This document shows, piece after piece, positions 38,459 to 59,224 of a DNA stretch of 64,000 bases. The position numbers were made by a program, and so were the translations under genes. The first letter of the stretch is position 1. Every line of letters starts with the position of its first letter. The notes under the pieces are model-generated. The model saw only the letters and a list, made by a program, of their open reading frames with translations, searched no databases and was not told the origin of the DNA. The stretch is from Bugula neritina (lineage: Eukaryota > Animalia > Bryozoa), in assembly GCA_964035545.1 (NCBI GenBank), contig OZ037773.1, forward strand, positions 2,509,751 to 2,573,750, given 5' to 3'.

Positions 38459-38999
38459 CTAAGGTGGCTTGGAAATCTGTAGATTTGAGAGCTGCCGGTC
38501 AGCTTTGTAGTGACCAGACTGGCGGCGACCAGAGCAGCACCAAGAACAAGAGAAGACGTCCAGAAGGGCATTGATTGCTCGCTTACGTCTGCTTCTACAC
38601 TCTGGAATGGCCTTCTTGCCATCCTCTATTGGTTTGCCCGACTCGATGAGAGACCCTTTGCTGCTCTGTGAACTCACTAAACTCTGAGCGTCATATTGGA
38701 CTCGCCGAGGGCTGCCAGGGAAAGTGAGCGAAGAGGAGGGCCGAGACAGGTCGTCTTCAAGAGTGTTGTCCCGGTAATCGGCATATGCATCTCGAGTTGA
38801 CGTCACCGGCTGTGAGAAGATAAGAAAAAAGCATCACAAATCCGTTAACACCCAGACAGAAACGAATTGAATCTCACAATAACTTGCAAGAGGAGAGAGA
38901 GGGGGGGAGACAGAGAGAGAGAGAGACAGAGGGACAGAGGGACAGAGAGACAGAGAGACAGAGAGACAGAGAGACAGAGAGACAGAGAGACAGAGAGAC

Positions 39000-39068
<69 letters not shown>

Positions 39069-42000
39069 GGGGAAGGGGAAAGAGAGGGGGGGGGGGAGAG
39101 AGAGAGAGAGACATAGTAACCACATCTTACCTTTACTGAGAGCTTAGTTGGAGACTTCTCCTGACGGTGAGACTTGGTGAGCGAGCTGGGGGCGTGTGAG
39201 GTGGGGCGGGAACTGAACGTCGACGTTGTAGTAGTGTTAGTCACCGACCCGGAGGTGAAGGTCACGGACGACGTACAAGGTGTTGCCACTATTAGCCGCT
39301 GTGAAGGTGGCAGTTTGTGTACTGGAGCTGCAGGAACTGAGGCTAACCTGAATTCAAACGTAGGCTAATAATAACATAGACAAACCAAGACTTGAGCTCA
39401 TAAAATCACACATCCGCAATACTTTCTCCAGAAGAAGTGAGACACATATTGAACACACAGGGAATAGGGAGGTCATCAGTTTCATTGAGAGAATTTTCAT
39501 TGAACAAAGACACATGATTTGAACTCCTGGAGGCTTAGCCTGACCCTTTAACTAATTTATAATCCAATGTTTATTTTGAGTAGCAGTTACCACATGAACT
39601 GCAAGCAGAGCTGGAAAACCAATTATCTAGTGAAGTAGCTGAACATGTCTGCAGCCCCTATTCTCTGCATACAATTCTATCAGTGGTACTGAACACCGGA
39701 TCACACCACCAGTTATGTAACAATTCAACTGCATGATATTATTTACTTTGCTATTCTACTAACAATGGGAAGAATGAGAAATGAGCAATACTGCTGAATT
39801 ATAAAAAGATAATGTTTGGCCAAGCACAGCACCATCTCCTGCACATCAATACCATCTCCTGCATTACTATTTACATATGGTGACTGCACGTATATTGTCA
39901 ATATTAGAGTTATGCCTCTTGATTTAGGCACCTAAAATAGCCCAACTTCCAACAATTACATGCCTAATTTCTGTATTCACTACCCAACAGCTCATATGTT
40001 TCATACCATCACCTAATAGAACTGAAGACAGGCAAAAGTTTCAGTCTACAGTTACATTTGCTTACAGATCAATGGAGGCTACACCGCCACAAGAGAAAAC
40101 AGATTCACCCTAGTTAGAAACCAACTCGAATATAAGAAATAATAAAATATTCAAGTCTGGACTATAAGTTGAAAGAAGGTACTAAATCCACACCAAGTTT
40201 TAGCATGAACCAAGAGACATAAATGAGTGAAAGAAATAAAGCAAAACCATCATAGCATATGAATAGTAAAACTTATAATTAGGTTTATAGCAGGATCACA
40301 ATAACACCCGAGTAGTGATCACGAACTAAGGCAGTATCTAGCCGCCCCTTCAATGTCTATTGAATGTTAGTAACATGTTGCTAGTTTAACCAGCGGCCTC
40401 TCTGCACAACCGCTCTACCTGCACACAGCTCCGACACCAACTACAGGTCTCATTGAATGCAGCTGGGAGTGTAGAGCCATCTAGTGTGTACATCTATCTA
40501 GATTCTAGTGCATACAGCTACTGTAGTTACAGCAAATGTGGGTAACCTTGTCGAATAATATGAAATGTTGATCTAGGCTTATGACAGCGTAGGAATTGAA
40601 ATTCCAGATAAATACACACAGAGCTGTTTTTACTGTCATTTACAGAACATCTAAGCAATCCTAGGGATACTGAGATGAGAGGCACTGAGTGCTGTTGCAG
40701 TTTATTCATCAACTACTTTGTAACTACTCAGCTGAACTGAAGGCGGGATATATTAAAGGAGAAGGTGGGAGATGTGAAGGAGAAGGTGGGAGATGTGAAA
40801 GGAGAAGGTGGGAGATGGAAAGGAGCTAATCAGGGCACTCAACACTAACACACACTGCAAGAACACCGAGTATGGCATGCTATGCCCCTCTTTATAGCCA
40901 CTAACAGACAACTGGCCACCTGAATATATATATCATTTTCCTAACACCATAGAAGGCAAGATCTAAAAAAGCTCTGAAGTTGATACGTGGGAAGGTGTTT
41001 GTAGCAATAAGAAGTAAGTTGTACTGAAGAAAATTCTGCAGTTACACTGAAGAGTTGCTGGCACGCTGAGCCGAGAGTGTACAGCTACTCAAGTAAAGAG
41101 TAAGAGAGAGTTTGGCCATTGCTGGGGTTAAAGTAAAGTCTTACCTGGGAGGAAGTGAAGGGGTGGACAAGTGAGATGGCGGTCGGTGCGGCTGCTTAGC
41201 AAGTGAGCAAGTTGGGTGTGACCTGCAGACAAAAGAAATCAAAGTGAAATAAGAAAACATGCAACTATCTTCAGTATTATTGGCATCAGGGACAAAAGAA
41301 ATGGGAGAAATTATTACATCTAATGATAATGTAAATAAAAAATGATTGCAAAAATAATCTTATATGAAGCTAAACTCTCTATTACAAACTTATTCCTATA
41401 ATGATTAGTATAATGATCAGTTGCATCACAAGAAGAATATAGCGTATAGTTGAATAAAGTATTTAAACAATATAATATAATACGAGCTGTCACTTGATTT
41501 ATAAAAGTGTCTGAAATAGTCATTAATTTGCAGTAGAAATAATTGAAAGCTCATTATACAAGTGTATTAGCTTGCATCCAGTAGCTTGGGTGCACTTGTT
41601 AGAACGCAGCACCACATTCAAGATATATACATTCTACTAGGAGAGACTTGTGCAACTGAGAGTTACTGGGGAGGGGGGTGACTGCACCTGGAGGGACGGG
41701 TGACGGTGCTCGAGGGTCTTGCAGGTAATCTTGGCGGAGGGAACTCTGGCACACAGTCATCCTCATCCTCCACAGGCACTGGTGGTAACTTCTGCGGTTT
41801 GTATGCTTTCTGTAGACTGGGGGAAGACTTCACATCTATCGGCTCATCTGATTGGCTGTGTGACCTGTCGGTCCGGCCGCGTCTCAAAGGCAGATTCACA
41901 CCGGAGCCGATGGACTGACTACGGAAGAGTGTCAAGTGGTGCGGCTTCTTGGGTAGTTCCGGGGCCGACTCGGTCTGAGCAGAGCACTTCTGAAACACCA

Positions 42001-44375
42001 GAACAGAGGCAACTCAGTACAGAGTAACACCAGTGATGGTACTTTCTTGTCTCAAACTGTCTACACAGAGGTAAAAAGTGTAATCTAAAATACAGAACAC
42101 CCCCCCTCCCCCCAGTGGTGGATGTCTTACCTTATTCAGTGAGTCACCAACTCTACTTGTCTCCACTTCTACTTCAGTCTGCAGTTTTGCTTCAGATTGC
42201 TCTGAAAAGTAAAAAGTACAGACTGATTATTGAACAGCAAAATATTCCAGACAGGGTGCTGCAAGCTAGTTCCATGACTCAGACTAGATGCCTAATGACA
42301 GAGCCTTCAAAACGACAACTACCACTGTGATAAAGAATATGAGAAATACCGGTTTCAGTTTGCAAGGGAGGGTTAGCATCTCTGATATCACACAGCATGT
42401 CCCTGATATCCAGCACGCGGTCTCGGAATCTTGTGGCATTGGTCAGATTAATGAAGGTCAAGCCATGTCGCTCCACCCCTGAGCCAGTAGTGTGAGAGGT
42501 TGGGGTTGACCAGTGGTGGAACAGACCGTTAGCTTCATTGTAGACCAAATCAGCAGTTATCGGACACCTTAGGATCTCCTAGACATGGAGAGTAAATGTA
42601 ATCATTTCAGTGTCTGGGCAGACAACTCAGAGAAACTATCATAATAATGAATGATGACAGTCGCAGTAACCTACAGTTTGAACCCCCGACAAACAAGTAT
42701 AAGCTGGAGAACAAGTATAAGCTGTGTAGCAGGTATAGCACTACTAACCATTCTGTCAAATAGCCGGCAAGCGACAATATAATGCTCCAAGCCTACAAAC
42801 TCAACATTGATGATGGACATCGGGTCTCCATGCTTGCACTTTATGGGGACCCAAAGAGCTGCTTGCTCATCAATCACCATCGGCTGAGCCTTCACCTTCA
42901 CAAAAGCTGGCAGAGCCCTGTAAAAGTGACAAGTATGCCAAACCACATAAACCATGAACCTCCAAATACACAACTTGAAGAAGAGCTTTGTTTCAGTTTT
43001 AAACTTATTAATACTACTTGACTAACTAGTAAATAGTATTGCATAGAAATAGGGTAGTAAGCAAATCCAAATGTATTATAGATTATTATTTAAATATTGG
43101 TATATAATAAGATATGCTTTATACTTAATATTTAGCATTATACTCGAGTAAATCAGATTTACTATTGAAATGACTGGCATGATTGTTTAAGTAGTTTCAA
43201 TGACTCAAATTGAAATTTCAACGAACTATATTTAGCTTCACAATTTATATTCTATCTCAGAATAACAAATACCTTATTATTTAGAGCTCTTGTCATGAAA
43301 CTATCATTATGATTTCAAAATCAGAATCGATATGAAGTCAAAAAAGGTTAGTTTAAACATTATTTTGTAAGTATAAACATTTATTACTAGACTTTGCAGC
43401 TTTAGAGTAAGGTAGCAAAACTGAAGAGTGGGGGTGAACTTTAAAATAAGTTGGTAATTGAAATTAAAACATTAACATTGATATATACAAGTGTTACTGT
43501 TAAACCTGGTAGAACTGGAGGCAAAATTTATAGCAAGAGTCACGTTTAAGATTAATGGTTTGAATTCTTAATATAACTTATACAATTATTCATATTATTT
43601 TACCAATATTTTATATTTTAAATATTGTAATTGCGTTTTGAATTAATGAATGCCATTTTTAAACCAAGTTCAATTTCAAGGTATAAACTCAAAAGCTAAT
43701 CTAAATATGAAAAGTTAACCCAAGGCTAACAGTAACAGTGAGTGTAACCACTAACTATGGATTTTATAGCCTTTCGTCTTTTTTACATTTAGTTTTACAA
43801 CTACTACTAGTACTACTACAACAACTTGAACTAGTCTACTACCACCACAAGTATGTGAGCACTTCTACTTATACCCTATGGCTACTAGTACTAGTAGTAC
43901 ACTAGTACTACTACAGTACTACTACAAGTACAACTTACTAGCTAATATTCATATTGATACTGCAACTAGTGAACTACAACTTGAACTTGCATTACCAAAA
44001 CAACTTAGTATCTAGTACTACTAATAGTAAAATTGATAATATTCATATTGATAGCATCTGCTAGTGCTATGCACTCGCAGACTATCAGACTCAGAGTCAG
44101 TATAACTATGACTATAAGAATCACTATCACTATGACATTGACTATGTTTTTAAATCGAAATTCAGATGCAGTTTCAAAGTGAGTTTTACTGTTTGAATCA
44201 CAATACCAACAGATATTCAATTTTAAACGATTTTAGGTATTTGCTAGATAAATAATTATTATAACCTACTGTGCCATATTATAAAATCGTCCGTTCAATT
44301 TTTAACCATCTTTATCTTCATGGTGATGATCGTCTTGTTCACTTACAATACCCTGACTTGACATGCCGTTCTCAT
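38459..44375 (-). CDS. spred: SPRED-like (Sprouty-related EVH1 domain) protein, ~481 aa
   Basis: Exons 44375-44347, 42917-42749, 42578-42350, 42201-42131, 41989-41688, 41222-41145, 39347-39131, 38809-38459 (TAG), all phase-compatible. EVH1 FVKVKAQPM..LWVP..CRLFDRMEILRC..DLVYNEANGLFHHW..HGLTF..ATRF resembles SPRED (RL.DKMVVLEC..DLIYN..FHHW..FGLTF). Also a KBD-like YADYR and a C-terminal SCSWCC. Confidence 0.78.
38892..39111. repeat. (GA)n/(GACA) microsatellite in a spred intron
   Basis: GAGA/GACAGAGA run. Confidence 0.95.
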
Positions 44376-45918: not shown

Positions 45919-48900
45919 TTACATCTTCAGCTCAAATTCTTTATTAAAATGGGTAGCCTTAGTGCTAGAGGCTGAAACAGGAGCAGATGGGGTAGTCGAT
46001 GCAAGGAATGGGTTGGTGGAAGAGTTACTGCGTAGAGCCCAGGCCGTGTCGAATGGATTCTGGGGGTTGGCAGCTGGCCCACCAACTAGGCCTGTAGAAG
46101 GCATACTGCCATTCGTCAGACTAATGTTAGTTGATTGCTGATTGGATGTTTGTATTGGTTGCTTGAACTGGTCAGCAGATAGACTGGGATTATGGCTAAA
46201 AGGTTGAGAGAGTGCGGAGGTGGTGGTGGGCCGAGGTCTACAAAATGCAATGTATGGTTACAGAAACAGCACTATTTCCCTCAGTTCAGTTTAAATGAGC
46301 TAAAAGTTGTAACAATGAAGATATCAGAATAAAAGTTGTAGCAGTGCATCAAGGTTCAACTCAATTAAATTTTCACCCAAATTATTTCAATGAACCACAA
46401 ATATTTTTGAGCCGCTGTGTTCAATGTTACAGCAATATGAAGTTGTCTTCTTTGTTGAACATGAGGCAAGGAGATACACCAAAAAAGATCCATAGTAACT
46501 AATTAACTATGATTGGTGATGAAACAACTCCAAATTTCCAATGATCTGATGATTATATACTTGACAAATTTTGAGTAAAAAATATTTTTGTTGTGAAGCT
46601 TTCTTTAACAACAATTTATTTTCATCAGCTATAAGTGCTGTCAGAAATATTTCCTCAATTATAGTTGCATAGATATTGTAGTAGAAAATAAAGATATCTT
46701 CAAATAATTTCGTAAGAGCAGAAATTATTGAATGTTTTTACAAGAAAATAACTAATTTCGCACACCCTTAATTGGCTATGAGAAATTATAGGATCTAATG
46801 CCTTCAAGTATGACAAATGTTACATTTTAAAACAGAGCATATTCAGTGTTAGGATTTAATGATCTAATAAGCAGGGATCAAAAGAAATACAAAGTAGTTC
46901 GTAGAGCATGAAGTTGACACTATGCAACAGGTGACCTAGCATTATGCTGCTAATGTCCCTATACGCAACTCGGAGGCTCTACTCGCCTAATGTGTGGCGA
47001 GACTACAGAAGTAGTTGTAGTTATAGAAGTTGAGAAACTAGATTTTGGTACAGTTGGAGCTTGACCAATGGTTGCCCTGGAGACCGGAGGGTTCGAGGGT
47101 GGAAGCCAGAAGTCGTTTTCCTGAGGAGCTGGAGCAGCCCACGGGTTTGTCTGCTGTATCGGATGAGCGCCATTTGTGGCAGCGACAGTCACGCCTGAGT
47201 GAACACATGGCAGTTTCATATAGAACTATATACAACTGCCGGAAACATATGATACGAAGTAACATACATTCATGCAGTACTAAAGTTACATTGATGCTTA
47301 GATGAGCAATCAAAGTAACCGTTCACTAAAGTTCACTAAATATACATATATATAAATATGTACTGATTATGCATGCATATAAATATATACCGACTATATA
47401 TTATATGTACAGATCTAATGCAAGGCTCATGAGATATTACTGGTAATAAATTTCCACTACGGTGACAAATCAAGACGCACTATGAAATTACCCAGAAATC
47501 AACACTCACCAGCTGCAGGAGACTGAGATAGTGGTGGCTGACTCGCTACTGCATCACTGCTGACATTTTTAGGTTCTTCTGAGTTGAGCCCAGTTAATCC
47601 TTTTGTTAGCTGCTGGCACATCTCTGCTATAGGGTCCCATGCATCGCCTGACGGCTTTTGTGGAGCTGTGTCTGTAAGAGCTGAGGCTAAAGTAGCAGGC
47701 TGGGGTGATTCTATAAAACCACGCAGTCACCATCATTAGGAGTTGCCTGTCTTATGTGTATTGAGAAGTAAACTGCAACTACTGATGAATAAAGCCCATA
47801 AGGTTGAGAAAAAGATAATAATTAAGATGCGCAAAGAAAAGCCTTTATATTGATGGAACTGGCCCATTATAAAATCCCAGTAGAAGACAGACAGAGATTA
47901 AGTTTACATAATGTAATAGACAAGTAGATAAGCTGCTAGATAACCGCGGCAGCTGCGCTAGCTGCCAAAATTCTGACCTAATTCTTCGTCTCCCTCAATA
48001 ATGGGTACATTTTCTCCAACAGGTTTGTCAAAGTCAGCTTGCTGCCTTGACAGGTTGCTAGGCAACTCGTTTAGTCTGAGAGAGAGGTTTCGCTTAAATG
48101 GGGAGTTTTGACTGAAACAAAAAATCATTGCATGAACTGCTGTACACATACATTGTAGTTAATGTTGAAGCTCTACGTATAATGTATTTATGCTCCAGGA
48201 TTTTGCAACAACTTCTAATTCACGCAACTCGAATTGCAAGAATTAACGATACAATGTTAAACCAAAATACTGGCAGAGTGAAAGGTGTGGTTGATTTCCT
48301 GTCACCTTCCATGCAACCCACCGTGTACACCGAGACACAGCTTAGTCCAGCCAACCTGTTAGGAGAGTGAGTGTGTGGTATGACTCATAAGTTAGTAACG
48401 AGATGGGCTGCACCAGTAAACTCATGACACAAAATCTTTTATTATTTCGAAAACACAAAAACTTATGGCCTAATCATTTACAGAAACAGAACTGTTTAAA
48501 TCAAGCATCAGCGCAAATTTTGGGCGCCATTTGCATTTAATATCATATCATATGTGACAGCGAGCTGAAAGCGATGTTAAAGTTCCAATGAGTTAAGGTG
48601 CACCCCACAAGTATGTTTCTTGCAATAGCATAGAACACTGCGGCTTATGACTACATCTAACTGAGTAAACAGGTTGAATGGCTGAAAAAGTCTTCCAGCA
48701 GTTGGTGTTATGCTTACTTTTACAGCTGCTGTTTAATACAGCATGGTGGTTATTGTAAAAACGAACAACATAAAACATAAACCAGTTGCTAAGTCAGCAA
48801 GCCTCTACTGTTATGAAACAGTCGAGTGCCATCACTTGGAGTGAGATGATGTCATGGGGAGATGATATTCCCTTAGTGCTGGAAGACTTTCATATCAGCA

Positions 48901-51900
48901 ATATTTAATCTGTTTAACCATGAACATGACGCCTGCATTTAGCAATGTCTGCATGGTGTGATGTCTGCACCGGACAGCTAGAAGTTTTATTACAATGCCA
49001 CACTAACAAACGCCAACAGCTGAACTATGCTGAAAGTGAATAAATGAAAAGAAAAGTTTTTCCAATTTGACACAAGAAAAGCTATCCAACTGAACAACTA
49101 AGACAAATATTAATGCGTAGTAACATGTAACTGCATGCTGATGACAGCCAGTGTTAGCCAATACCGTGCTCTTGATTCGATCACCTCTCTCCAAAGTGCT
49201 GCCATAAACTCGCCTCTAACAAACAAGTAACCAGTTGACAAGAGATCAGTCTAATGTGTGCATGAGGAGAGCTCAGTCTATTGTGTGCACGAGGAGAGCT
49301 CAGTCTAATGTGTGCATGAGGAGAGCTCAGTCTAATGTGTACATGAGGAGAGCTAAGTCTAATGTATGCATGAGGAGAGAGAGTTGAGAATAGAAATAAT
49401 ATAACTGACTGAAAGGATTTGTAATAATAACACAACCATAGTGAAAGAAGATGAATAATTAATCATAGTTGTTGCATAAAATGACAGGATCAAAGCTGAA
49501 TGGGAGAAATAAGTTTGACCGTGACGGTGGAAAAGAGTAGATCAGATGCAATTATGGAGCAAAAAGAAACAAGATAGCAGAACCTGTAGAATGTCAAGAT
49601 GCAGGCAGGACAACTGCCAACATACATAAATATATATAACATAACTCCAACTCAATTGTAACAAGTAATAACACGGAAAGCCTGTGGCACCTGTTGAGTT
49701 TGTTGAAAGTATTAAAAGATCCCTGTCTAAGTAATAGGTTGGCAGATGCGTGCGGTCGCTCTACTTGTGCTGTTTCTATGTTGGGCCGAACGGCACTGGG
49801 AGAAGCGGAATTGGCGGCGGGTTCCACCACTTTCGTAGACTGTGGGTCCGCCAGTCTCTCTGTGAGGGTAGCCTGTCTGAAGGAGCCCAGTCTTGAAAAA
49901 CCTGGCAACAAGAACGACACTTTAACTCGAGTGTGACAACATTTGCTCTTCAGCAAGTCATTCCTTAGTTGATCAGATCTCAGTTATCTCCCACAACACT
50001 CACTACTCTCTAGTGTCAGTGACTCATTAGTATTAGTGACTTATCAGTATCAGTGACTCATTAGTATCAGTGACCCACTAGTAGTAGTAACTCATTAGTA
50101 TCAGTGATTCATTAGTACCAGTGACTGACCAGTTGACTAGCATTAGTGACTCAGTATTATTAGTGACTCAATAGCCTAGTATACTAGTATCAGTAACTCA
50201 TTATTCTAGTATCAGTATCAGTCAGTATAAAAGTCAACACTCACTTGTCTTATCATCGTTATACGACACGGACACCGCCTCTTTCTCTCTCTTCTGCTTC
50301 TTCTCCAAACACACGGCGAAGGCGCAACCAACTGCGTGACTTAACCTTTCACCCTGAAAATAATGTCAGAGAAAACTCTTATAACAAGAATAATGATTGC
50401 TGAGCCAAATCAGTTGATTGCCATAGCTAACTCACTCATAGATAAACTAACAAAGCATTGTACAAGGAGATTGTATTCAGAATGATTTATGCAAACCAAT
50501 GTATGATACTCGGGGTATTGATTGCAGCATCAGCAATGGTACACCTATACAGCTTATCATACAATGGCTGCACTTGTAATCCAAACAGTTGTAAGCATGC
50601 AGTGAGCATTCAAGAGATATGAAATTCATGCCAAGAGCAATTTAGTGAGGAACTGGTAACCAGAAGAGAAACAGAGAATTGCTGACAGCTCTGCATGCTG
50701 GTTAGCCAATCACAAGTCATCTACTTACAGCACTCCAAAGACAACCTGACCAATCAGAAACAAGCTGACAGTTGGTATATGAATCCAGAAACCATTCCAA
50801 TTCAACATTTCATAAAAGGAAATGGCTAAATTATGTCTTTTAAAAACTCATTGCAATCCACTACCACCTGATCTATCAACATAAGAAAAACTCCTTGCGT
50901 GATTGGCCAGTTCAAACTGAACTGCACCTTGATTGGCTAATTCAAAGCTAAAGACAGCCAGATCCCTCTTACTACATCAGGATTGGCCAGTTGCATTTGT
51001 TAGAAATTAGATGGTAATACTTAGAGAACACTATGCACAAATGGATAATATATAAACAGACACACCGTGATGATTACGATACACTGGCCTATACTCAATG
51101 TGCAAAACTAAAACGTACAATACCAAAACCTTCCAACACGAAAACGACCAAATATCTTGTACAATACGGATGTTTAGAGTGGGAAAACATGACAGACTGA
51201 ACATCTAACACAATATCCAACAATGAAACCACACACAAACCGCCGTAGGACTGAGCTAAAAGTAGAACACAAAACCGAGCTAAAAATAGAACACAGAACT
51301 GAGCTAAAAACAGAAGAGTTGACAACTTGAAAGTTAGCTTCTGCAAAATGCTAAACCAAAAGTCTGAGTAAATCTCAAGTCTGAGCCACACAATGCTAGT
51401 TTACAAGAGACATATTCAATTCACCATATTTACAAACCCTAGGCGGTCACTGTAGCTGCTGTAGCAAAAGCTAAACATTATATAGTGAAACAGGCAGTAC
51501 TTACAGACTCTTTCAAAGCTAAGAATCCGTGACACATCCACCTGCGGGTGGTGCCATCCCTGCAGATGTAGGCGAATGCCTTCTCATGGTTCTTGGCAGG
51601 TGCACAGAAAGACACTTTCTCAATGGTCTGGTCTACTATGAGACCCTGAAATATGCTTTATACATATAACATATAGTAATATAATCATATACTCAGTTAT
51701 ATATAACATATAGTAATATAATCATATACTCAGTTATATAGCAATATAATCATATACTCAGCTATATATAACATATAGTAATTTAATCATATTATATAGA
51801 ACATTATGTAATATATAACAATGTAGTCATCTAAAATAACATGTGTTGATGTGTAGCAAACCACAATTATTTAAAACAATAAGAGTACAATATGTAAAAG

Positions 51901-54900
51901 AAATGCCAGCAAACAAAGAAATACAACATAGTACAGGCAGCACAAAAGTTGTTATAAGATTTAGCAGTGAGGCAGTGAAGGGTACCTAAAGAAACACAAT
52001 TTGACCAACTAAGCCCTTTGTGCTAATAAATGTGTAACTAGAAGGGACAGGATATGGCCTGGTTTTTGAAACTAAAATGTAGTAAGTTCACAGTTTTTTA
52101 AGTTCATAGGCATTTATTGGAACCAGCAATTCGTCAACTACTGCTTTTTCCAGCAATTTGGCTATCAGCTCCACCACGGGTGGGGGAGGAGTGAAATAGA
52201 TTGCAGGGTCTTTCTAAGTGCAAAGACACACCAAACGGATCTTCATATCAAACAACAAACTGCTAACACACACTCAAACTACACAACTGATTGGCTAATG
52301 TGAGGTGTCAGACAGGTGCCTGATTGGTTGATATTTATAAAGAAGTACCTGGCCATCATCAGCACTGGCGATGCTGGCCTTCTCTTCAATCACCCGCAAC
52401 GAGTCACCAGAGACATATATTATGGCCTGGACAACTCGCTGTCTCTTTTTATTTTTCTTACGAAAACTTAAACGTTGAGACTTCTTTGCGTTCTATAAAA
52501 TGAAAATGTGCGGAAGGTACAACAAATAGAATAACAACAGTCGTACAACATGGAAACAACCTCCTGCAAACTTCTAACACTTTTACCTCCAGTCTCCAAA
52601 GTATCAGTGGATAGTTGGAGTTGCCCACTCAAAGTTGGATACAGTGAGCTAGGGGTTTGAGTGGAGACGCACAGACAGAAGTGTTGGAAGTTTACAAGAA
52701 TACGGAGTAGAATTACCTTACTCATCTCATCCACCACTCTCAGTGCGTCACCAGACACATATAACACGGCTCTCTGGTATTTACCCTTGCATTGCTGAGA
52801 CACACAATATTATAATGTATGTATATATATGAGAGTAAAGATGCTTAGCTCTAGATTACTAGCAAATAGTAGTAATAATTTATATTTAAGGTGAAACTTG
52901 ACTGGGTGATAACCCTGAACACAGCCTACTTAGAAATATACATATAATACATTGGTTAGCTAATAGTTCACAAATAGTAATGTGTTAATATTAGCATTCT
53001 CATGCATAACTACCTATTTGTTTCCTAAATTTCCCAATAACTACAACGTGAAAATATGCATCCCTAAGTGAGAACAACTTCTCAGATATTTGATTCCATC
53101 AAAAAAAAGTTATCTTGTGAAGTCGCATTGATTTGGAATATTTTTATGCTAAAAGCATTTTAAAAAACTTGATAATTTCTTCTTTTACTGTGGCCAACAA
53201 GATTAGAAGAAAAACATCTATCATGAGCCACATAACTAATAAACAGTGTAACTACAACGTGGTCACTAACACACTCCATACTAGCACTACTTGACATATC
53301 ACAGGATAAACAAGGAGCGGTTTCTACGCTTCAGAGTGCAGAGAAAATATCAGTGATTTAGTTCATACCCTGTACTTGTTACACGTTAAATGCAATGCTA
53401 ACATTTGAACTACATTCAAGTTGCAAACACTAGTGCTATTGTAAAGTAACATCGAAATATTTTTTGTTATACAGAGGCAGTCTGTTACGTAGCTTTTATA
53501 GATGTTTTATTGTGTTTTAATAGATTAGATAAACTACTCACAGAATATGTAAACTAAACACCTCGGACACTTTAAAATATCATTCTCATCTCTACATCCT
53601 AAAGTCTAAACTAAGACTGTGGCAACAACACAAGTTGTTAATACAGCCTCAGTTTTATTAGTAAAAAACTAACATATTCTCATCTTACATTTGCATTTAA
53701 TAAATGAGAGATCTAAAGCTATTTTAGCAAGTTGTTGAGAAACTCAGGTTTTTACAATGGAAATGAACTTCTTAATTATATAATGATTTATATATTATAC
53801 AGGTGGGCATGATTTAGTAGCCTATATGACATAATACAGATAGACATACTTTAGTATATGGCACCATACAAGTATACAGGTGGAAACAAGCATTACCTGT
53901 CTCAGTATCTTGTGGGCTTCTTCACACACCTGCATGCCCCGAGACTCGAACACTTCAACACAGCCCAAGTACTACAAAGACACACAGCACACGGGATATA
54001 TAATACATCAACTTAGTTTCTTTGTGTTCCCTACACACAAATATTGAAACTTACTTCTATATGGTTTACAGTACAGCTGACAGTTATTGAACCCTGGTGC
54101 ACCAAGGCCGGTTTTGGAGTTATTTCCTTAAAAATGTTGGTCTATGGCAAAACTTTGAGCTGGAAAAATGACAACAATCTAGCAAGGATAAATTTCATTG
54201 TCTATTTGACAAGACTATTCACTGTGCATAATAACATTGAAAGTAGTTTTCTAAAGAGTGAATAACAAGTTTGGTATTGCACTTCTTTATTTACTCACAG
54301 AAACACCTTCCATTACATTACCAAGTTAAATTCAAAAAACAGCCTACAATCCTAGGAAATATTGACTAGATAGAGACAAATGAGTGTGAAAAACATAGTT
54401 TTAATGAATTGTCTGCCCTTACAACCTAACAGCTATTTTATCATACAGGAGCATTGAACAGACATAGAGGAGATAACTTTAGTTTGTATGCAAAGGGCTT
54501 GGTATAAAAACATGATGCTGAATGGACTATTGTTGACATAAGAATTGATTAGTGAAACAACATTATCAGTAGATAGACAATAAGATATGCGATATAATAC
54601 ACAGACAGGGGAGTAACTCACACCAATGCATATAGTTTACACGAATGTAACCTCAGTTGTTATAAAAAAGGAAAGTAAACATTTCATGTTGTGATTAGAG
54701 AGCTAGTAGCAGTTAACCTTCCAACTTGATGATTATTACACTATAAAATGCTATCAATTACAACCTCACTCATATATCGCACAGCTGAGTGCCAAATGGC
54801 ATACCAGAGTTGGCTAGGTTAACACATTGTTGCAAAATCTCAACTAAATGTCATATTAAATGACTACAATCCTTGCCTTCATGAAATGCCCAGGAAGAAT

Positions 54901-56306
54901 GTTAGCTACACCCTTAGAGCCCACTGCACACAGAGCTTGTTATGTAACACTTGCAGCTGACGTATCTACTTGAATGTTCAATGAACTGTGGTAGATACCG
55001 TAATACTACACTGTTACACTGTGGTAGACACTGTAACACTACACTGTTACACTGTAGTAGACACTGTAACACTACAATGTTACACTGTCGTAGACACTGT
55101 AACACTACAATGTTACACTGTAGTAGACACTGTAACACTACAATGTTACACTGTAGTAGACACTGTAACACTACAATGTTACACTGTAGAACATACTGTA
55201 ACACTACAACCATGCACTTTAGTGTACAATGTAACGCTACAATCTTGCACTGCAGTACATACTGTAACACTACAAACTTACATTGTGGTTGCTACTGTAA
55301 AGGTTTGTTTATACATCCAATTAAAAAAGTTTTAGAGGATTTCACTTTATAGCTCTACTGAAACTAGTTGAAATCGAATTGATGCAGTAGAAGACTTTTC
55401 AATAGTGAAACATGACTCCCTTAATCTCTATTTGATGCCCTTCCAAACCGTAATGTATCCCCAAACTCGATAGGATAAAACTGACAATTGAGAACTGGAG
55501 CTGATATTACAGAATTTGAAGCTTTTACTAGACTCGCTGCAGTTTTATTCAAGTCTTCTAAACGGCAAAGTGATAATTAAATACCTACAAGGATTTATCC
55601 TTCCCTTTGACTATTATCCTAAAATCCCAGGGAAAGTTATCACAAGACACTAAATTTGACGAGTGGTTTGGCAAAGTAAAAATGTAAAACTTTAAACTGA
55701 AAATCGTGAAGGTACAAACGAATTTCAACCCTAAAATCTCGCTACAAGATATGAAACCCTAATACTGGGCTCTGCACTATTGTTTGATTCAGCTTGGACA
55801 CCTGTGATCTAGAATGATCTGGAATGACTCACATCAGAAGACGCAAAATAGCAGACAAATATCCCCAGTACTCTCATGTTTATAACAAACATAAACATTA
55901 ATTCTACAGTTGAGACAGATATTGCTGCCCTATTAGAGTCAGCATGTGAAATCACAATGCTAGGTGAAATCCTCACCTCACCTATCTCCCCTGTCCTGTT
56001 CAGGTGAAATATTCATATTGAGATTTAGTAATAACTAAACTGACACTAGCAGCTGTTGACTCATGCTTGAGTGTGATAACCTTTTACACTGCTATACTAA
56101 CCTGATACACCAATACACTAACCTATTGTACTGAAATAGCCCTACTAAATCAGTAGATAAAATCTACAAACCTTGACCTGGAAGCTACAAGTTCCCTCTC
56201 TCACTTTTCGCTCATCCTCTTGCCATTGATGTGGCTTTGCGGACTCGGTTTCCTTTCTCTTCTTTTTCCGAGACCGAAAACTTAGCGTTCTTCTCAGTTT
56301 ATCCAT
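45919..56306 (-). CDS. numb: Numb (PTB domain + NumbF + NPF motifs), 536 aa with exon A or 558 aa with exon B
   Basis: Exons 56306-56172, 53971-53897, [52794-52717 or 52492-52349], 51645-51505, 50353-50245, 49901-49691, 48111-47978, 47710-47510, 47194-46987 (GC donor), 46237-45919 (TAA). Motifs: [98 protein letters not shown], two NPF, C-terminal FELKM. Confidence 0.95.
49240..49382. repeat. 27-bp minisatellite x5
   Basis: AGTCTAATGTGTGCATGAGGAGAGCTC units. Confidence 0.9.
50012..50225. repeat. 17-bp minisatellite containing AP-1 consensus sites
   Basis: TCAGTGACTCATTAGTA units. Perfect TGACTCA at 50020, 50054, 50147, 50164. Confidence 0.85.
52349..52492 (-). CDS. numb: numb alternative PTB exon B (paralog of exon A at 52717-52794)
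   Basis: ttttatag|AAC...CAG|gtactt, 144 nt, phase 0/0, open. Encodes [48 protein letters not shown], homologous to exon [27 protein letters not shown]. Confidence 0.8.
54985..55290. repeat. 33-bp minisatellite, ~9 copies
   Basis: CTGTAGTAGACACTGTAACACTACAATGTTACA units. Confidence 0.92.
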
Positions 56307-59224
56307 TTTTTCACTTATTGAAATATGCCTTTACTAGAAAGCATCACCACAAGCACTAAAACAGTCCCAGATATCACAGTTCAGGTGAAAATAATACAGA
56401 CACAGGTGTGTTATGGAATGCTACACACGATAATATAATAATTATAATAAATATTAAAGTACTAAACTGACACCAGTTTAATATGTAGTACAATCAGTAA
56501 GAGATTTTTCTCAGCTGATAAGTTAGCAAAGAAGGTTTCAGTTCATATAGACCACCATCAATATATTCTACTTAGACGACCCCCAACTGGAGGACTTCCA
56601 GGTTATTTAAAAACATTAGGAATTAAAAAAATTAATATTTGATGCCAAGTTACATTTATTTTGGTTTCGTGTGCACAGGTGTCTAATTGAAGCCATGCAT
56701 AGGTGTATAACTGAGGCCATATGCATAATATGATTCTTTGAAGCCATTGCTCTAACAGTTTACTGAAGTCATTATCCATAAGATGCCTAATTTTTTAAAA
56801 ATATTATCATATAATTCTTTAGACTATTCTTCTATATTACATTCATTCAATTTCAAAGTTTAAAATAGTCAAATATATTTAAATATCATCTGCACATATA
56901 TTTGATAGCAATATTTGAGGTCGTCTATCTGGAATGACACCAAAGAAAGACATTTCAGAAGGTGAGCTTCAATTACCAATGAAAAACAGCCCAGATATAG
57001 AAATCCACTGAAACTTTGTAAATAAATGTTTCTTTATCCACCTAATGACTCAGGTTGCTGAGTCACCTATTATTATAGCATAAATATGTTTACGAGAACA
57101 ATATCTTTTGACTATATTTACAAGCCTTTGGCCCACCAAGAGGGTAAATGTTACAAATATTTGCATTACCTAATAAAACTGTATCAACTTAGTAATTACA
57201 GGTTGAGTAACTTTAAATTATTGGTTAACAAAGCTAACATTTAGCACATTTCACTCACAGTAGTATAGCATTAGTTCACTCACTAGATTATTGACACCTT
57301 GGGGCACCTTAATAAACTTTCTCAACTAGCTTTAGATTATATTGAAATAATGAGTTGAAATGATTCTGAGACTAATATTACTTTATGTTTGAGTAATAAT
57401 ATTCTTCACCAACAGGCTGTAACAACCAATGATGATATGGGCATGACTATTAACATGAACGACTGGCCACAAAATTCACTAACTTGTTAAATTTTTGCTA
57501 ATGTAGCAGTGCATTAGTAGTGTTACCATTTCATAATTATAACTTGGACTGCCAGCATATTATTGGAAATGATTTTTTTAATTAGAAGTGTCAGATATGG
57601 AGCATAAAACAATTTAAATACCTAATTCTATCATTATGACTGATACATTACAAGTCTGATTGGAACTATGATGGAAAATTTAAAGCTTGTAACTCTTTAT
57701 TTCACTAGAAGAAAATCATCTACCATTCATATGTTCACAAGCAATAAAAAAGGAGAAGCCATTACTGTTACTTACTATAGTAGGAATAATTAAAGTATTA
57801 CCTAATAACACTAATAATCTCTACGATAATACAGCTTTACGCCTGAGTATCAGTATGACTTTGACTACCGTCGTCCTAGATCAAGTTCTATAAGGACCAT
57901 GAGTATGACTATGACTGTGACTATGGGTATTACAATCAGTACTGCATTAATATATATCAAAAAGTATTAATTTATAATTAGTGATATTGTCTATTACTTC
58001 ATCACTTTATAGCAGTACGACCTATTGGTTATCATTTAAAGTAAAGGCAGTGAGTCAGCGGACAATCACAATGTATGTGTAAATTACTCAATGTCAAGCT
58101 AAAAAGTCAATAATCATTTGATACCCAATGGAAATGTGGATAATTGAAAATAAAAGTGAATAAGAGTTTGAGCATCAGCATGACGGTTATTCCTTAAAGT
58201 TAACAAGTCTAACTAATACTAAAATTTATGAGTTATAACTATCACATCAATATAAGACATAAGATTAATAATTATAATAATAATATTATTATTAGTATAA
58301 AGCTAAGTACCACTATTACCAGTAGTAGTACTACTACTCCTAGTCATACTACTACAGTACTAGTAGTAACACTGTGACTGTTACCAACAGTAATACTAAC
58401 AGTTAAATTTAATGTTATAGTTATACTTAATTTTAGTACTATTGGTATTAGTATGACTATGAGTATCACTACCCCTATCAATTATCACTATCAGAATGAG
58501 AATCACTATGGCTATCAGTATCACTATCACTATGAGACTCGGACTGACTCTGAGTATCAGTGTCACTGTCAGTATCACTCTATCAGCATCACCAATAAAA
58601 CCGCACAGATATAACTATAACTATTCTGATTCTCATCATGATCATCATTATGATGATGATAATCACTTTGAGTGTGACTTTAACTTTAAGTTTATGATAT
58701 ATCATTATCATAATGATTATCATTATCATAGAATTAGACATCAAATTAAATCAATATGAATATATTTATGATATCCATTATGATTATGATTATCACTTTA
58801 TCATTATGATTATGATTTAGATTATCATTATGGCACCAGTATTTAATTTTAGTTTTACTATTAGTATTACTATTACTCTATTAGTATTAGTATTACTATT
58901 AGTATTACTTACTCTTACTCTTAGTATTACTATTATAATTACTATTACATTTACTGAGTATAAGTATTAGTATTTATTTTTAATTTAAATTTTAGTCTTT
59001 TGAATTGGGTTCAGAGTAAAACTAGGTCATATTGATATTGATAATAATAGTTAGCCGAATTCAATGGTAAGATATCATCACAAACAATATTATTGAAATT
59101 ACAGTCATTAAAAAATTCACTTGACACTAACGCCATTGCCTATTAACTTACGCTTGCGACTAGTGATTAGCTCAACGTAATACTAATAATTATTGTCATT
59201 GAAAAAGTAGTTGACCTAGTTTAC

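What the first reader, a model, noticed from the sequence alone, without database searches (positions are those of the whole stretch)
52349..52794. Numb PTB domain encoded by a tandem-duplicated exon pair; one copy adds a polybasic, aPKC-type membrane switch
Seen: two homologous phase-0 exons 224 nt apart. Exon A is [26 protein letters not shown]. Exon B is [48 protein letters not shown]. Both are open, have canonical splice sites, and fit between ..HKILRQ and [11 protein letters not shown] adds 14 aa N-terminally (10 K/R in its first 19 aa) and 8 aa C-terminally. Known: vertebrate Numb makes PTB-long isoforms with a basic 11-aa cassette at this same position, linked to plasma-membrane binding. 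Numb cortical localisation is switched off by aPKC phosphorylation of basic-hydrophobic motifs. B's RLSFRKK echoes this gene's own N-terminal [11 protein letters not shown]. Inference: a lineage-independent, convergent PTB-long/PTB-short switch built by exon duplication, with an extra phospho-regulated membrane motif. Joint inclusion would stay in frame but duplicate PTB strands, so an active exclusion mechanism is implied.
Basis: partly seen in the sequence, partly recalled or inferred. Interest (0 to 1): 0.85.

Follow-up and report, generated by a model that had tools for sequence, protein, structure and literature searches.

The report
Ancient alternative exon pair in Numb
The bryozoan Numb gene has two alternative versions of one PTB-domain exon; the longer, strongly basic version is the one found in mRNA, and the same pair exists in another bryozoan and a brachiopod, so a "PTB-long" Numb isoform is not confined to chordates as the literature states.

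Summary
The single-copy Numb gene of a Bugula neritina-complex bryozoan lies on the minus strand. It has two homologous phase-0 exons 224 nt apart, both with AG/GT sites: A (52794-52717, 26 aa) and B (52492-52349, 48 aa).

- **Exon B is used.** One RNA-seq contig joins exon 2 to B to exon 4 and skips A. The GenBank B. neritina model and both Watersipora RefSeq isoforms carry B. That RNA comes from a sibling Bugula lineage, not the window's own.
- **Exon A was not seen spliced in any bryozoan.** It is nevertheless intact and under strong purifying selection (pN 0.03-0.09, synonymous sites saturated).
- **The pair is old.** The same A-then-B pair occurs in Watersipora and the brachiopod Lingula. 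Lingula RefSeq lists separate A-only and B-only isoforms.
- **Annelids differ.** They place a similar basic segment (RMSLRRKK) in a stand-alone cassette exon at the same PTB position.

The pair is therefore an ancient lophophorate feature, not a Bugula invention. It conflicts with published statements that PTB-long Numb is chordate-only. A structure model keeps the PTB fold with B. The aPKC-controlled membrane-switch role, A's use in bryozoans and the exclusion mechanism remain untested inferences. The A-B intron is unusually conserved.

The parts
56172..56306 (-). Numb coding exon 1 ([45 protein letters not shown]). It holds the N-terminal polybasic [10 protein letters not shown] motif.
   Evidence: open frame. 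joint 53971/56172. Matches P0001 residues 1-45.
53897..53971 (-). Exon 2 ([25 protein letters not shown]), constitutive. It encodes PTB strand beta1 and helix alpha2.
   Evidence: (77-nt contig 53897-53973, joints on both sides).
52717..52794 (-). Alternative exon A, 78 nt. This is the canonical short version, 24-25 of 26 residues identical to the copy in the other bryozoan and brachiopod genomes.
   Evidence: It was seen only in an unspliced contig.
52493..52716 (-). The A-B intron, 224 nt. It is 96% identical with no indel between two Bugula lineages, is single copy in the genome, and is predicted to form a long hairpin.
52349..52492 (-). Alternative exon B, 144 nt. This is the long version found in mRNA.
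   Evidence: (316-nt contig joining exon 4, B and exon 2). (P0001 residues 71-118).
52436..52492 (-). The polybasic N-terminal part of exon B ([19 protein letters not shown], 10 K/R in 19 residues). The RLSF serine codon AGT is at 52466-52468.
   Evidence: The motif is conserved in all bryozoan copies and is RRSFRRKK in Lingula.
51505..51645 (-). Exon 4 ([10 protein letters not shown]...FLALKES), constitutive.
   Evidence: (piece 51504-51644 joined to exon B).
50243..50353 (-). Exon 5 ([37 protein letters not shown]), constitutive.
   Evidence: (pieces in runs X1 and X6).

Best explanation
This is the single-copy Numb gene of a bryozoan of the Bugula neritina complex. Exons A and B are an ancient tandem-duplicated pair of alternative exons. 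Each encodes the linker after helix alpha2, strand beta2 and the beta2-beta3 loop of the PTB domain.

Splicing takes one exon or the other. This gives a canonical PTB-short Numb (A) or a PTB-long Numb (B). B adds a polybasic, serine-containing segment ([13 protein letters not shown]) and lengthens the hairpin loop by 8 residues. In the bryozoan data available, B is the main form.

**Shown**
- B is spliced in and A is skipped.
- Both exons are conserved under purifying selection.
- The pair is shared with Watersipora and Lingula.
- Lingula RefSeq annotates A-only and B-only isoforms.
- A structure model keeps the PTB fold with B.

**Inferred**
- A is used in bryozoans, in some stage or cell type not yet sampled.
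- The basic segment raises electrostatic binding to the plasma membrane.
- Phosphorylation of its serine by aPKC or a related basophilic kinase releases that binding, as at the N-terminal site of Numb.
- Exclusivity is set by splicing regulators or RNA structure in the conserved A-B intron.
For: **Splicing of B.**: in run X1 a 316-nt contig (depth 1130, close to exon 5 at 1086) joins 51504-51644 to 52348-52492 and then to 53897. No joint touches exon A. KAF6026457.1 of B. neritina (558 aa, PID + NumbF) reads exon 2, then B, then exon 4.

**Distribution.**
- Watersipora X1 and X2 are both B-type.
- Lingula X1 and X2 are B-type and X3 (545 aa) is A-type.
- the A-then-B pair with AG/GT sites and lengths of 78 and 141-150 nt occurs in six genomes.

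**Selection.**: for exon A, pS is 0.67-0.99 and pN is 0.03-0.09. For exon B within bryozoans, pS is 0.5-0.9 and pN is 0.06-0.2.

**Structure.**
- the AlphaFold2 model has mean pLDDT 80.7. B's NAKKSQRL extends helix alpha2, [12 protein letters not shown] is a low-confidence loop, and the strands are intact.
- B's N-terminal extension fills the gap occupied by the exon-3 insert in human PTB-long (5NJJ).

**Literature.**
- PMC11889595: exon 3 enhances plasma-membrane localisation, and S7 is an aPKC site that controls membrane release.
- PMC6020718: aPKC sites lie within polybasic membrane-binding domains of Numb, Lgl and Miranda.

**A-B intron.**: it is 96% identical between Bugula lineages, against 70-86% for neighbouring introns.
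Against: - No spliced A form was found for any bryozoan.
- The RNA evidence is a single run kept as contigs. Contigs show presence, not absence or level.
- Base-for-base variant matching shows that run belongs to the GenBank B. neritina lineage, not the window's own.
- The Lingula isoforms are automatic RefSeq models whose RNA support I could not inspect.
- Nothing tests phosphorylation or lipid binding. KKNKKRQR could equally be a nuclear localisation signal or a protein-binding surface.
- The intron hairpin has significant fold energy only in Bugula and Lingula (z -2.5 to -3.9). It does not in three other bryozoan loci (z -0.6 to -1.4).
Confidence: 0.62

Rival explanations
1. Exon B has become the constitutive exon in bryozoans. 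Exon A is an unused relic, or a sequence kept for a non-coding reason such as a splicing-regulatory element.
For: Every bryozoan transcript or model seen is B-type. No A-type Bugula fragment is in the protein collection.
Against: Exon A keeps its open frame, its AG/GT sites and 24-25 of 26 residues while synonymous sites are saturated across four bryozoan lineages and Lingula. That pattern is one of protein-level selection. Lingula has an annotated A-only isoform.
Confidence: 0.12
2. A and B are alternative exons, but B's basic segment does not act as an aPKC-gated membrane anchor. It acts instead as an isoform-specific protein-binding surface, as vertebrate exon 3 does for MDM2 and LNX, or as a nuclear localisation signal.
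For: Vertebrate exon 3 creates a non-canonical peptide-binding surface for MDM2 and LNX1 (PMC11889595; PMC6778778). KKNKKRQR has the composition of a classical nuclear localisation signal. The segment is modelled as exposed and flexible.
Against: The conserved core is R-[LIR]-S-F-R-[KR]-K-K in bryozoans and Lingula. It closely copies the Numb N-terminal motif, whose serine (S7 in mammals) is an aPKC site controlling membrane release. Exon 3 in vertebrates also enhances membrane binding, so the two roles are not exclusive.
Confidence: 0.22
3. Both exons are normally included together, or both skipped. The B-only contig would then be a minor or assembly-selected form.
For: Both exons are multiples of 3, so double inclusion or double skipping stays in frame. 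An old ab initio Lingula model (P0128, 595 aa) joins A and B.
Against: There is no 52717/52492 or 53897/51645 joint. The B-only contig has the same depth as constitutive exon 5. Curated-pipeline models in three species have one exon only. A+B would duplicate strand beta2 of a compact PTB fold.
Confidence: 0.04

Closest known systems
Chordate NUMB exon 3 (PTB-long / PTBi isoforms p72 and p66)
   Same: Both are alternative splicing that lengthens the PTB domain at the same point, between helix alpha2 (..LRQ / ..RLKA) and strand beta2 (5NJJ alignment). Both insert a basic and hydrophobic segment. In vertebrates the insert enhances plasma-membrane localisation (PMC11889595).
   Different: - The chordate version is a 33-nt stand-alone cassette (11 aa) upstream of a single core exon.
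- Here the extension is part of a 144-nt alternative copy of the core exon, lying downstream of the short copy.
- The sequences are not recognisably similar.
- B also lengthens the beta2-beta3 loop by 8 residues and carries a serine in an aPKC-like context.
- The literature calls exon 3 a chordate invention that is absent in invertebrates (PMC6778778).
Annelid Numb basic cassette exon (Paralvinella, Owenia and unnamed transcripts)
   Same: It sits at the same PTB position, has a similar polybasic serine motif (SRMSLRRKKK against [11 protein letters not shown]) and is alternatively included (Owenia isoforms).
   Different: It is a stand-alone 60-63-nt cassette upstream of a single A-type core exon, with no B-type core copy. 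I cannot resolve whether it is homologous to exon B or convergent with it.
Classical mutually exclusive exon pairs from tandem exon duplication (for example FGFR2 IIIb/IIIc, tropomyosin, Dscam clusters)
   Same: These are also tandem homologous exons in the same phase, each fitting between the same flanking exons and encoding the same structural element. The intron between them is conserved.
   Different: - The two exons differ almost two-fold in length (78 against 144 nt).
- Frame, intron length and splice-site type exclude the NMD, steric and U2/U12 mechanisms.
- No conserved docking/selector pairing was found.
- Use of one member (A) is not yet shown in this phylum.
aPKC-regulated polybasic (basic-hydrophobic) membrane motifs of Numb, Lgl and Miranda
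   Same: Both are a K/R cluster with hydrophobic residues and an embedded serine. The motif is nearly a copy of the Numb N-terminal motif, whose serine (S7 in mammals) is phosphorylated by aPKC (PMC6020718).
   Different: Here the motif sits inside the PTB domain and is present only in one splice form. No biochemical evidence exists for it.

Membership tests
Numb / Numb-like adaptor proteins | N-terminal PTB (PID, PF00640) domain of the Numb type | tested here: met
   P0001:20-190 matches Drosophila Numb PTB 2NMB at E 3.6e-68. PF00640 is precomputed for P0001.
Numb / Numb-like adaptor proteins | NumbF region (PF06311) after the PTB domain, and C-terminal NPF motifs | tested here: met
   PF06311 is recorded on P0001. 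NPFDTAW and NPFLAST are in the last exon.
Mutually exclusive exon pair | Tandem homologous exons, same phase, each compatible with the same flanking exons | tested here: met
Mutually exclusive exon pair | Each exon is found alone in mature mRNA | tested here: inconclusive
   B alone is shown. A alone is seen only as a Lingula RefSeq model (P0126) and not in any bryozoan.
Mutually exclusive exon pair | The two exons are not, or only rarely, joined together or skipped together | tested here: inconclusive
   There is no A-B or exon 2-exon 4 joint, but contigs cannot show absence.
Chordate NUMB exon 3 (PTB-long) | Insert lies between helix alpha2 and strand beta2 of the PTB domain | tested here: met
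   the human 5NJJ insert and B's extension fill the same gap relative to PTB-short (1WJ1, 1DDM).
Chordate NUMB exon 3 (PTB-long) | Stand-alone 33-nt cassette exon encoding about 11 aa, with sequence of the ERKFFKGFFGK type | tested here: not met
   The extension is the 5' part of a 144-nt exon. Only scattered identities appear.
aPKC-regulated polybasic membrane motif | K/R-rich cluster with hydrophobic residues and an embedded Ser/Thr | tested here: met
   [19 protein letters not shown] has 10 K/R in 19 residues and no acidic residue. It is conserved.
aPKC-regulated polybasic membrane motif | Binds acidic phospholipids, and aPKC phosphorylation releases it | not testable with these tools
   This needs lipid-binding, kinase and localisation assays.

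The most novel reading that the evidence does not exclude
A regulated PTB-long/PTB-short switch in Numb is ancestral to Spiralia, or even to Bilateria. On this reading the lophophorate exon B, the annelid basic cassette and chordate exon 3 all descend from one ancient alternative segment. That would overturn the published view that PTB-long is a chordate invention. In lophophorates the long form would carry a second, isoform-specific aPKC phospho-switch inside the PTB domain, and the exon-like conserved A-B intron would control the exclusive choice through RNA structure.
Probability: 0.15. Interest if true: 0.75.

Novelty: new variant of a known kind. Interest (0 to 1): 0.55.

Why it matters
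Numb is a central cell-fate and polarity determinant. [quoted passage not shown]

Here, PTB-long forms at the same structural position are encoded in bryozoans and a brachiopod by a duplicated alternative exon, and in annelids by a cassette exon. In bryozoans the long form is the main one detected.

This gives a testable case. Either splicing-controlled membrane affinity of Numb evolved repeatedly, or it has deep ancestry. It also gives a natural pair of isoforms, with and without an extra aPKC-like motif, for polarity studies in spiralian embryos. Spiralian embryos divide by stereotyped asymmetric cleavages.

Tried and rejected
- **Short fragments with exon B.** The search for homologous proteins with exon B alone found nothing. 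The length filter makes this blank meaningless.
- **Spliced A-type Bugula fragments.** A 70-aa exon 2-A-exon 4 query returned only other animals' fragments and unspliced exon-A ORFs.
- **Other RNA runs.** Runs X3, X4 and X6 gave no contig on exons 2, A, B or 4. This is uninformative.
- **Rfam.** The whole window gave no match at gathering score.
- **Docking/selector pairing.** Inverted repeats in 51400-54100 are short, AT-rich and not conserved. Intron flanks show no motif conserved across distant species, except about 50 nt upstream of B shared with two related bryozoan contigs.
- **A-B intron hairpin.** It is significant in Bugula (z -2.54, -3.94) and Lingula (-3.87). It is not in SRR31252263 (-0.99), SRR25569786 (-1.41) or Watersipora (-0.60). 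Window controls gave -1.15 and -0.15. I keep it as a lead only.
- **Transposon origin of the A-B intron.** Rejected, because it is single copy in the 216-Mb genome.
- **A second Numb gene.** Rejected, because only a distant PTB paralogue exists on contig C3.
- **Exclusion by NMD, steric block or U12.** Rejected from sequence: lengths are 78 and 144 nt, the intron is 219-845 nt, and all sites are GT-AG.
- **Depth argument for a non-B form.** Dropped. Exon 2 has depth 1632 against 1130 for B, but constitutive exon 5 has 1086 and contig depth is unreliable.
- **Loci not on record.** Owenia P0010, Lineus P0014 and Watersipora P0006 could not be fetched.

Full report
**1. What is in the sequence**

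On the minus strand, exon A (52794-52717, 78 nt) reads [26 protein letters not shown]. Exon B (52492-52349, 144 nt) reads [48 protein letters not shown]. Both are preceded by AG and followed by GT, and 224 nt separate them. The upstream exon ends ..EEAHKILRQ|gt at 53897. The downstream exon begins ag|[10 protein letters not shown] at 51645. The coding gene runs from an ATG at 56306 to a stop near 45925, with NPF motifs at the C-terminus. A motif scan finds only these two copies in the window.

**2. Gene and organism**

A full-library phmmer search with exon B found a 558-aa protein, P0001. This is KAF6026457.1 of Bugula neritina, with PID and NumbF domains. It reads exon 1, exon 2, exon B, exon 4 and onward, so it lacks exon A.

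The window is not the same assembly. The two loci are about 85% identical over 5.8 kb, with dS of about 0.13-0.18 in the exons. The window is therefore a sibling lineage of the B. neritina complex. Its genome (216 Mb, 321 contigs) has one Numb gene.

**3. RNA evidence**

The run search listed only coded runs. I laid four of them on 50230-56229.

In X1, a 2016 'symbiont metagenome' RNA-seq kept as contigs, one 316-nt contig of depth 1130 covers exon 4 (51504-51644). It jumps to exon B (52348-52492) and then to exon 2 (53897). A further joint links exon 2 to exon 1 (53971/56172). No joint touches exon A.

Exon A appears only inside an unspliced 508-nt contig (52487-53011, depth 155). I read this as pre-mRNA from a library without poly-A selection. 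The B contig's depth matches constitutive exon 5 (1086), so B is the main form in that sample, with the caveats that apply to contig depth.

The X1 variants coincide base for base with the GenBank B. neritina locus (table 3). The RNA therefore comes from that lineage, not the window's own. The other three runs gave nothing on these exons.

**4. Comparative evidence**

Exon-B-like ORFs in three other data sets (P0002-P0004) led to genomic contigs. I also fetched the loci of B. neritina, Watersipora subatra and Lingula anatina.

| Locus | Exon A length | Exon B length | A-B intron |
|---|---|---|---|
| Window | 78 nt | 144 nt | 224 nt |
| B. neritina GCA_010799875.2 | 78 nt | 144 nt | 224 nt |
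| SRR25569786 | 78 nt | 141 nt | 640 nt |
| SRR31252263 | 78 nt | 141 nt | 219 nt |
| Watersipora | 78 nt | 141 nt | 845 nt |
| Lingula | 78 nt | 150 nt | 379 nt |

In all six loci the order is exon 2, A, B, exon 4, and all sites are AG/GT.

Nei-Gojobori counts show saturated synonymous change with few replacements:
- Exon A: pS 0.67-0.99 and pN 0.03-0.09.
- Exon B among bryozoans: pS 0.5-0.9 and pN 0.06-0.2.

Both exons are therefore under protein-level constraint.

RefSeq isoforms are as follows:
- Lingula X1 and X2 carry the B-type exon (GGPNAKKQSLLRRSFRRKKVGIRAILYISGDSLRVVEEKSALERNPDSNK).
- Lingula X3 carries the A-type exon.
- An old ab initio Lingula model joins both exons.
- Watersipora X1 and X2 are both B-type.

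The pair thus predates the bryozoan-brachiopod split.

**5. Other spiralians**

Among 124 Numb homologues, most have a 49-50-residue ESRG..VDQT segment, which is the short form.

Annelids add a basic segment before an A-type core: SKGHRSVWSRMSLRRKKKDKKDK, or SYKERKRKSSKLKFWKAPNE in Owenia. Owenia has isoforms with and without it. In Paralvinella this segment is a stand-alone 63-nt phase-0 cassette between exon 2 and the core exon, with no B-type core copy. Lineus has isoforms with an 11-aa insert after the core exon, VKDTKGINSNK. It ends like Lingula exon B.

So alternative lengthening of the PTB at these two points is widespread in Spiralia, and it is built in at least two ways.

**6. Protein consequences**

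Compared with solved Numb PTB structures, B has a 15-residue insertion after ..LRQ and an 8-residue insertion in the beta2-beta3 loop. The human PTB-long insert (5NJJ) fills the same first gap, with only scattered identities.

An AlphaFold2 model of P0001:20-195 built on a 30-sequence alignment has mean pLDDT 80.7 and keeps all PTB elements:
- NAKKSQRL continues helix alpha2.
- [12 protein letters not shown] is a low-confidence loop.
- The 8 extra C-terminal residues form a low-confidence hairpin loop.

The conserved core R-[LIR]-S-F-R-[KR]-K-K nearly repeats the N-terminal [10 protein letters not shown]. In mammals the equivalent serine, S7, is an aPKC site whose phosphorylation releases Numb from the membrane (PMC11889595). 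aPKC sites inside polybasic membrane-binding domains are a recurring theme (PMC6020718). The membrane-switch reading is therefore reasonable, but it is inferred.

**7. Mechanism of exon choice**

NMD, steric hindrance and U2/U12 incompatibility are excluded by exon lengths, intron length and splice-site type.

Between the two Bugula lineages the A-B intron is 96.0% identical with no indel. That equals the exons, while flanking introns are 70-86% identical. The intron is single copy in the genome.

It is predicted to form a long hairpin in Bugula (z -2.54 and -3.94) and in Lingula (z -3.87). Three other bryozoan loci do not show this (z -0.6 to -1.4), and control intron stretches from the window gave z -1.15 and -0.15. 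I found no conserved docking/selector pairing. The mechanism is unknown, and the conserved intron is the best lead.

**8. Comparison with the literature**

Confalonieri et al. [quoted passage not shown] The 2025 JBC review (PMC11889595) speaks of a single invertebrate NUMB form. My searches for Numb together with mutually exclusive exons, or together with spiralian taxa, found no description of this pair. The Lingula isoforms do exist as database models, but I found no paper describing them.

**9. Verdict**

B is real and used, and the position matches chordate exon 3.
- The pair is ancient and shared across lophophorates, not a Bugula-specific convergence.
- Use of A in bryozoans, the aPKC switch and active exclusion remain to be tested.
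- This is a new variant of a known kind of isoform switch. It is of moderate interest because it contradicts an explicit claim in the literature.

Noticed in passing
window 50214-56399 against L006 (B. neritina GCA_010799875.2, VXIV02002273.1): The window and the published B. neritina assembly are only about 85% identical across this locus, with exon dS of about 0.13-0.18. The two assemblies therefore represent different members of the B. neritina species complex. The 2016 RNA-seq run X1 matches the published one base for base.
   Followed up: partly
window 54985-55300 (Numb intron 1): A 33-nt tandem repeat with 9.6 copies at 86% match. It stays open in one minus-strand frame ([14 protein letters not shown]...). 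Short X1 contigs of depth 92-257 land on it, so related copies may be transcribed or lie elsewhere in the genome.
   Followed up: no
window 51664-51792 (just upstream of the exon 4 acceptor): An AT-rich tandem repeat with a 28/37/65-nt period. Its units are weakly complementary to an AT-rich stretch upstream of exon A (52822-52837). The stretch is not conserved in the sibling lineage, so I take the pairing for chance.
   Followed up: partly
P0014 and P0133-P0146 (Lineus longissimus); P0010 and P0129-P0132 (Owenia fusiformis): A further alternative segment sits at the beta2-beta3 loop, directly after the core exon. It is an 11-aa VKDTKGINSNK in Lineus and a 4-aa KSTQ in Owenia. This is the same position as the 8-aa C-terminal extension of exon B.
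   Followed up: no
G000:C3:2234448-2234588 (L012): A second PTB-type exon, 45% identical to Numb exon 4, lies on another contig. It is probably a different PTB adaptor gene.
   Followed up: no
window 38460-42020, minus strand: Long open stretches rich in Ser and Pro lie downstream of Numb, and a (CT)n-type microsatellite reading SLSLSL sits at about 38850-39130. This is probably another gene. I did not examine it.
   Followed up: no
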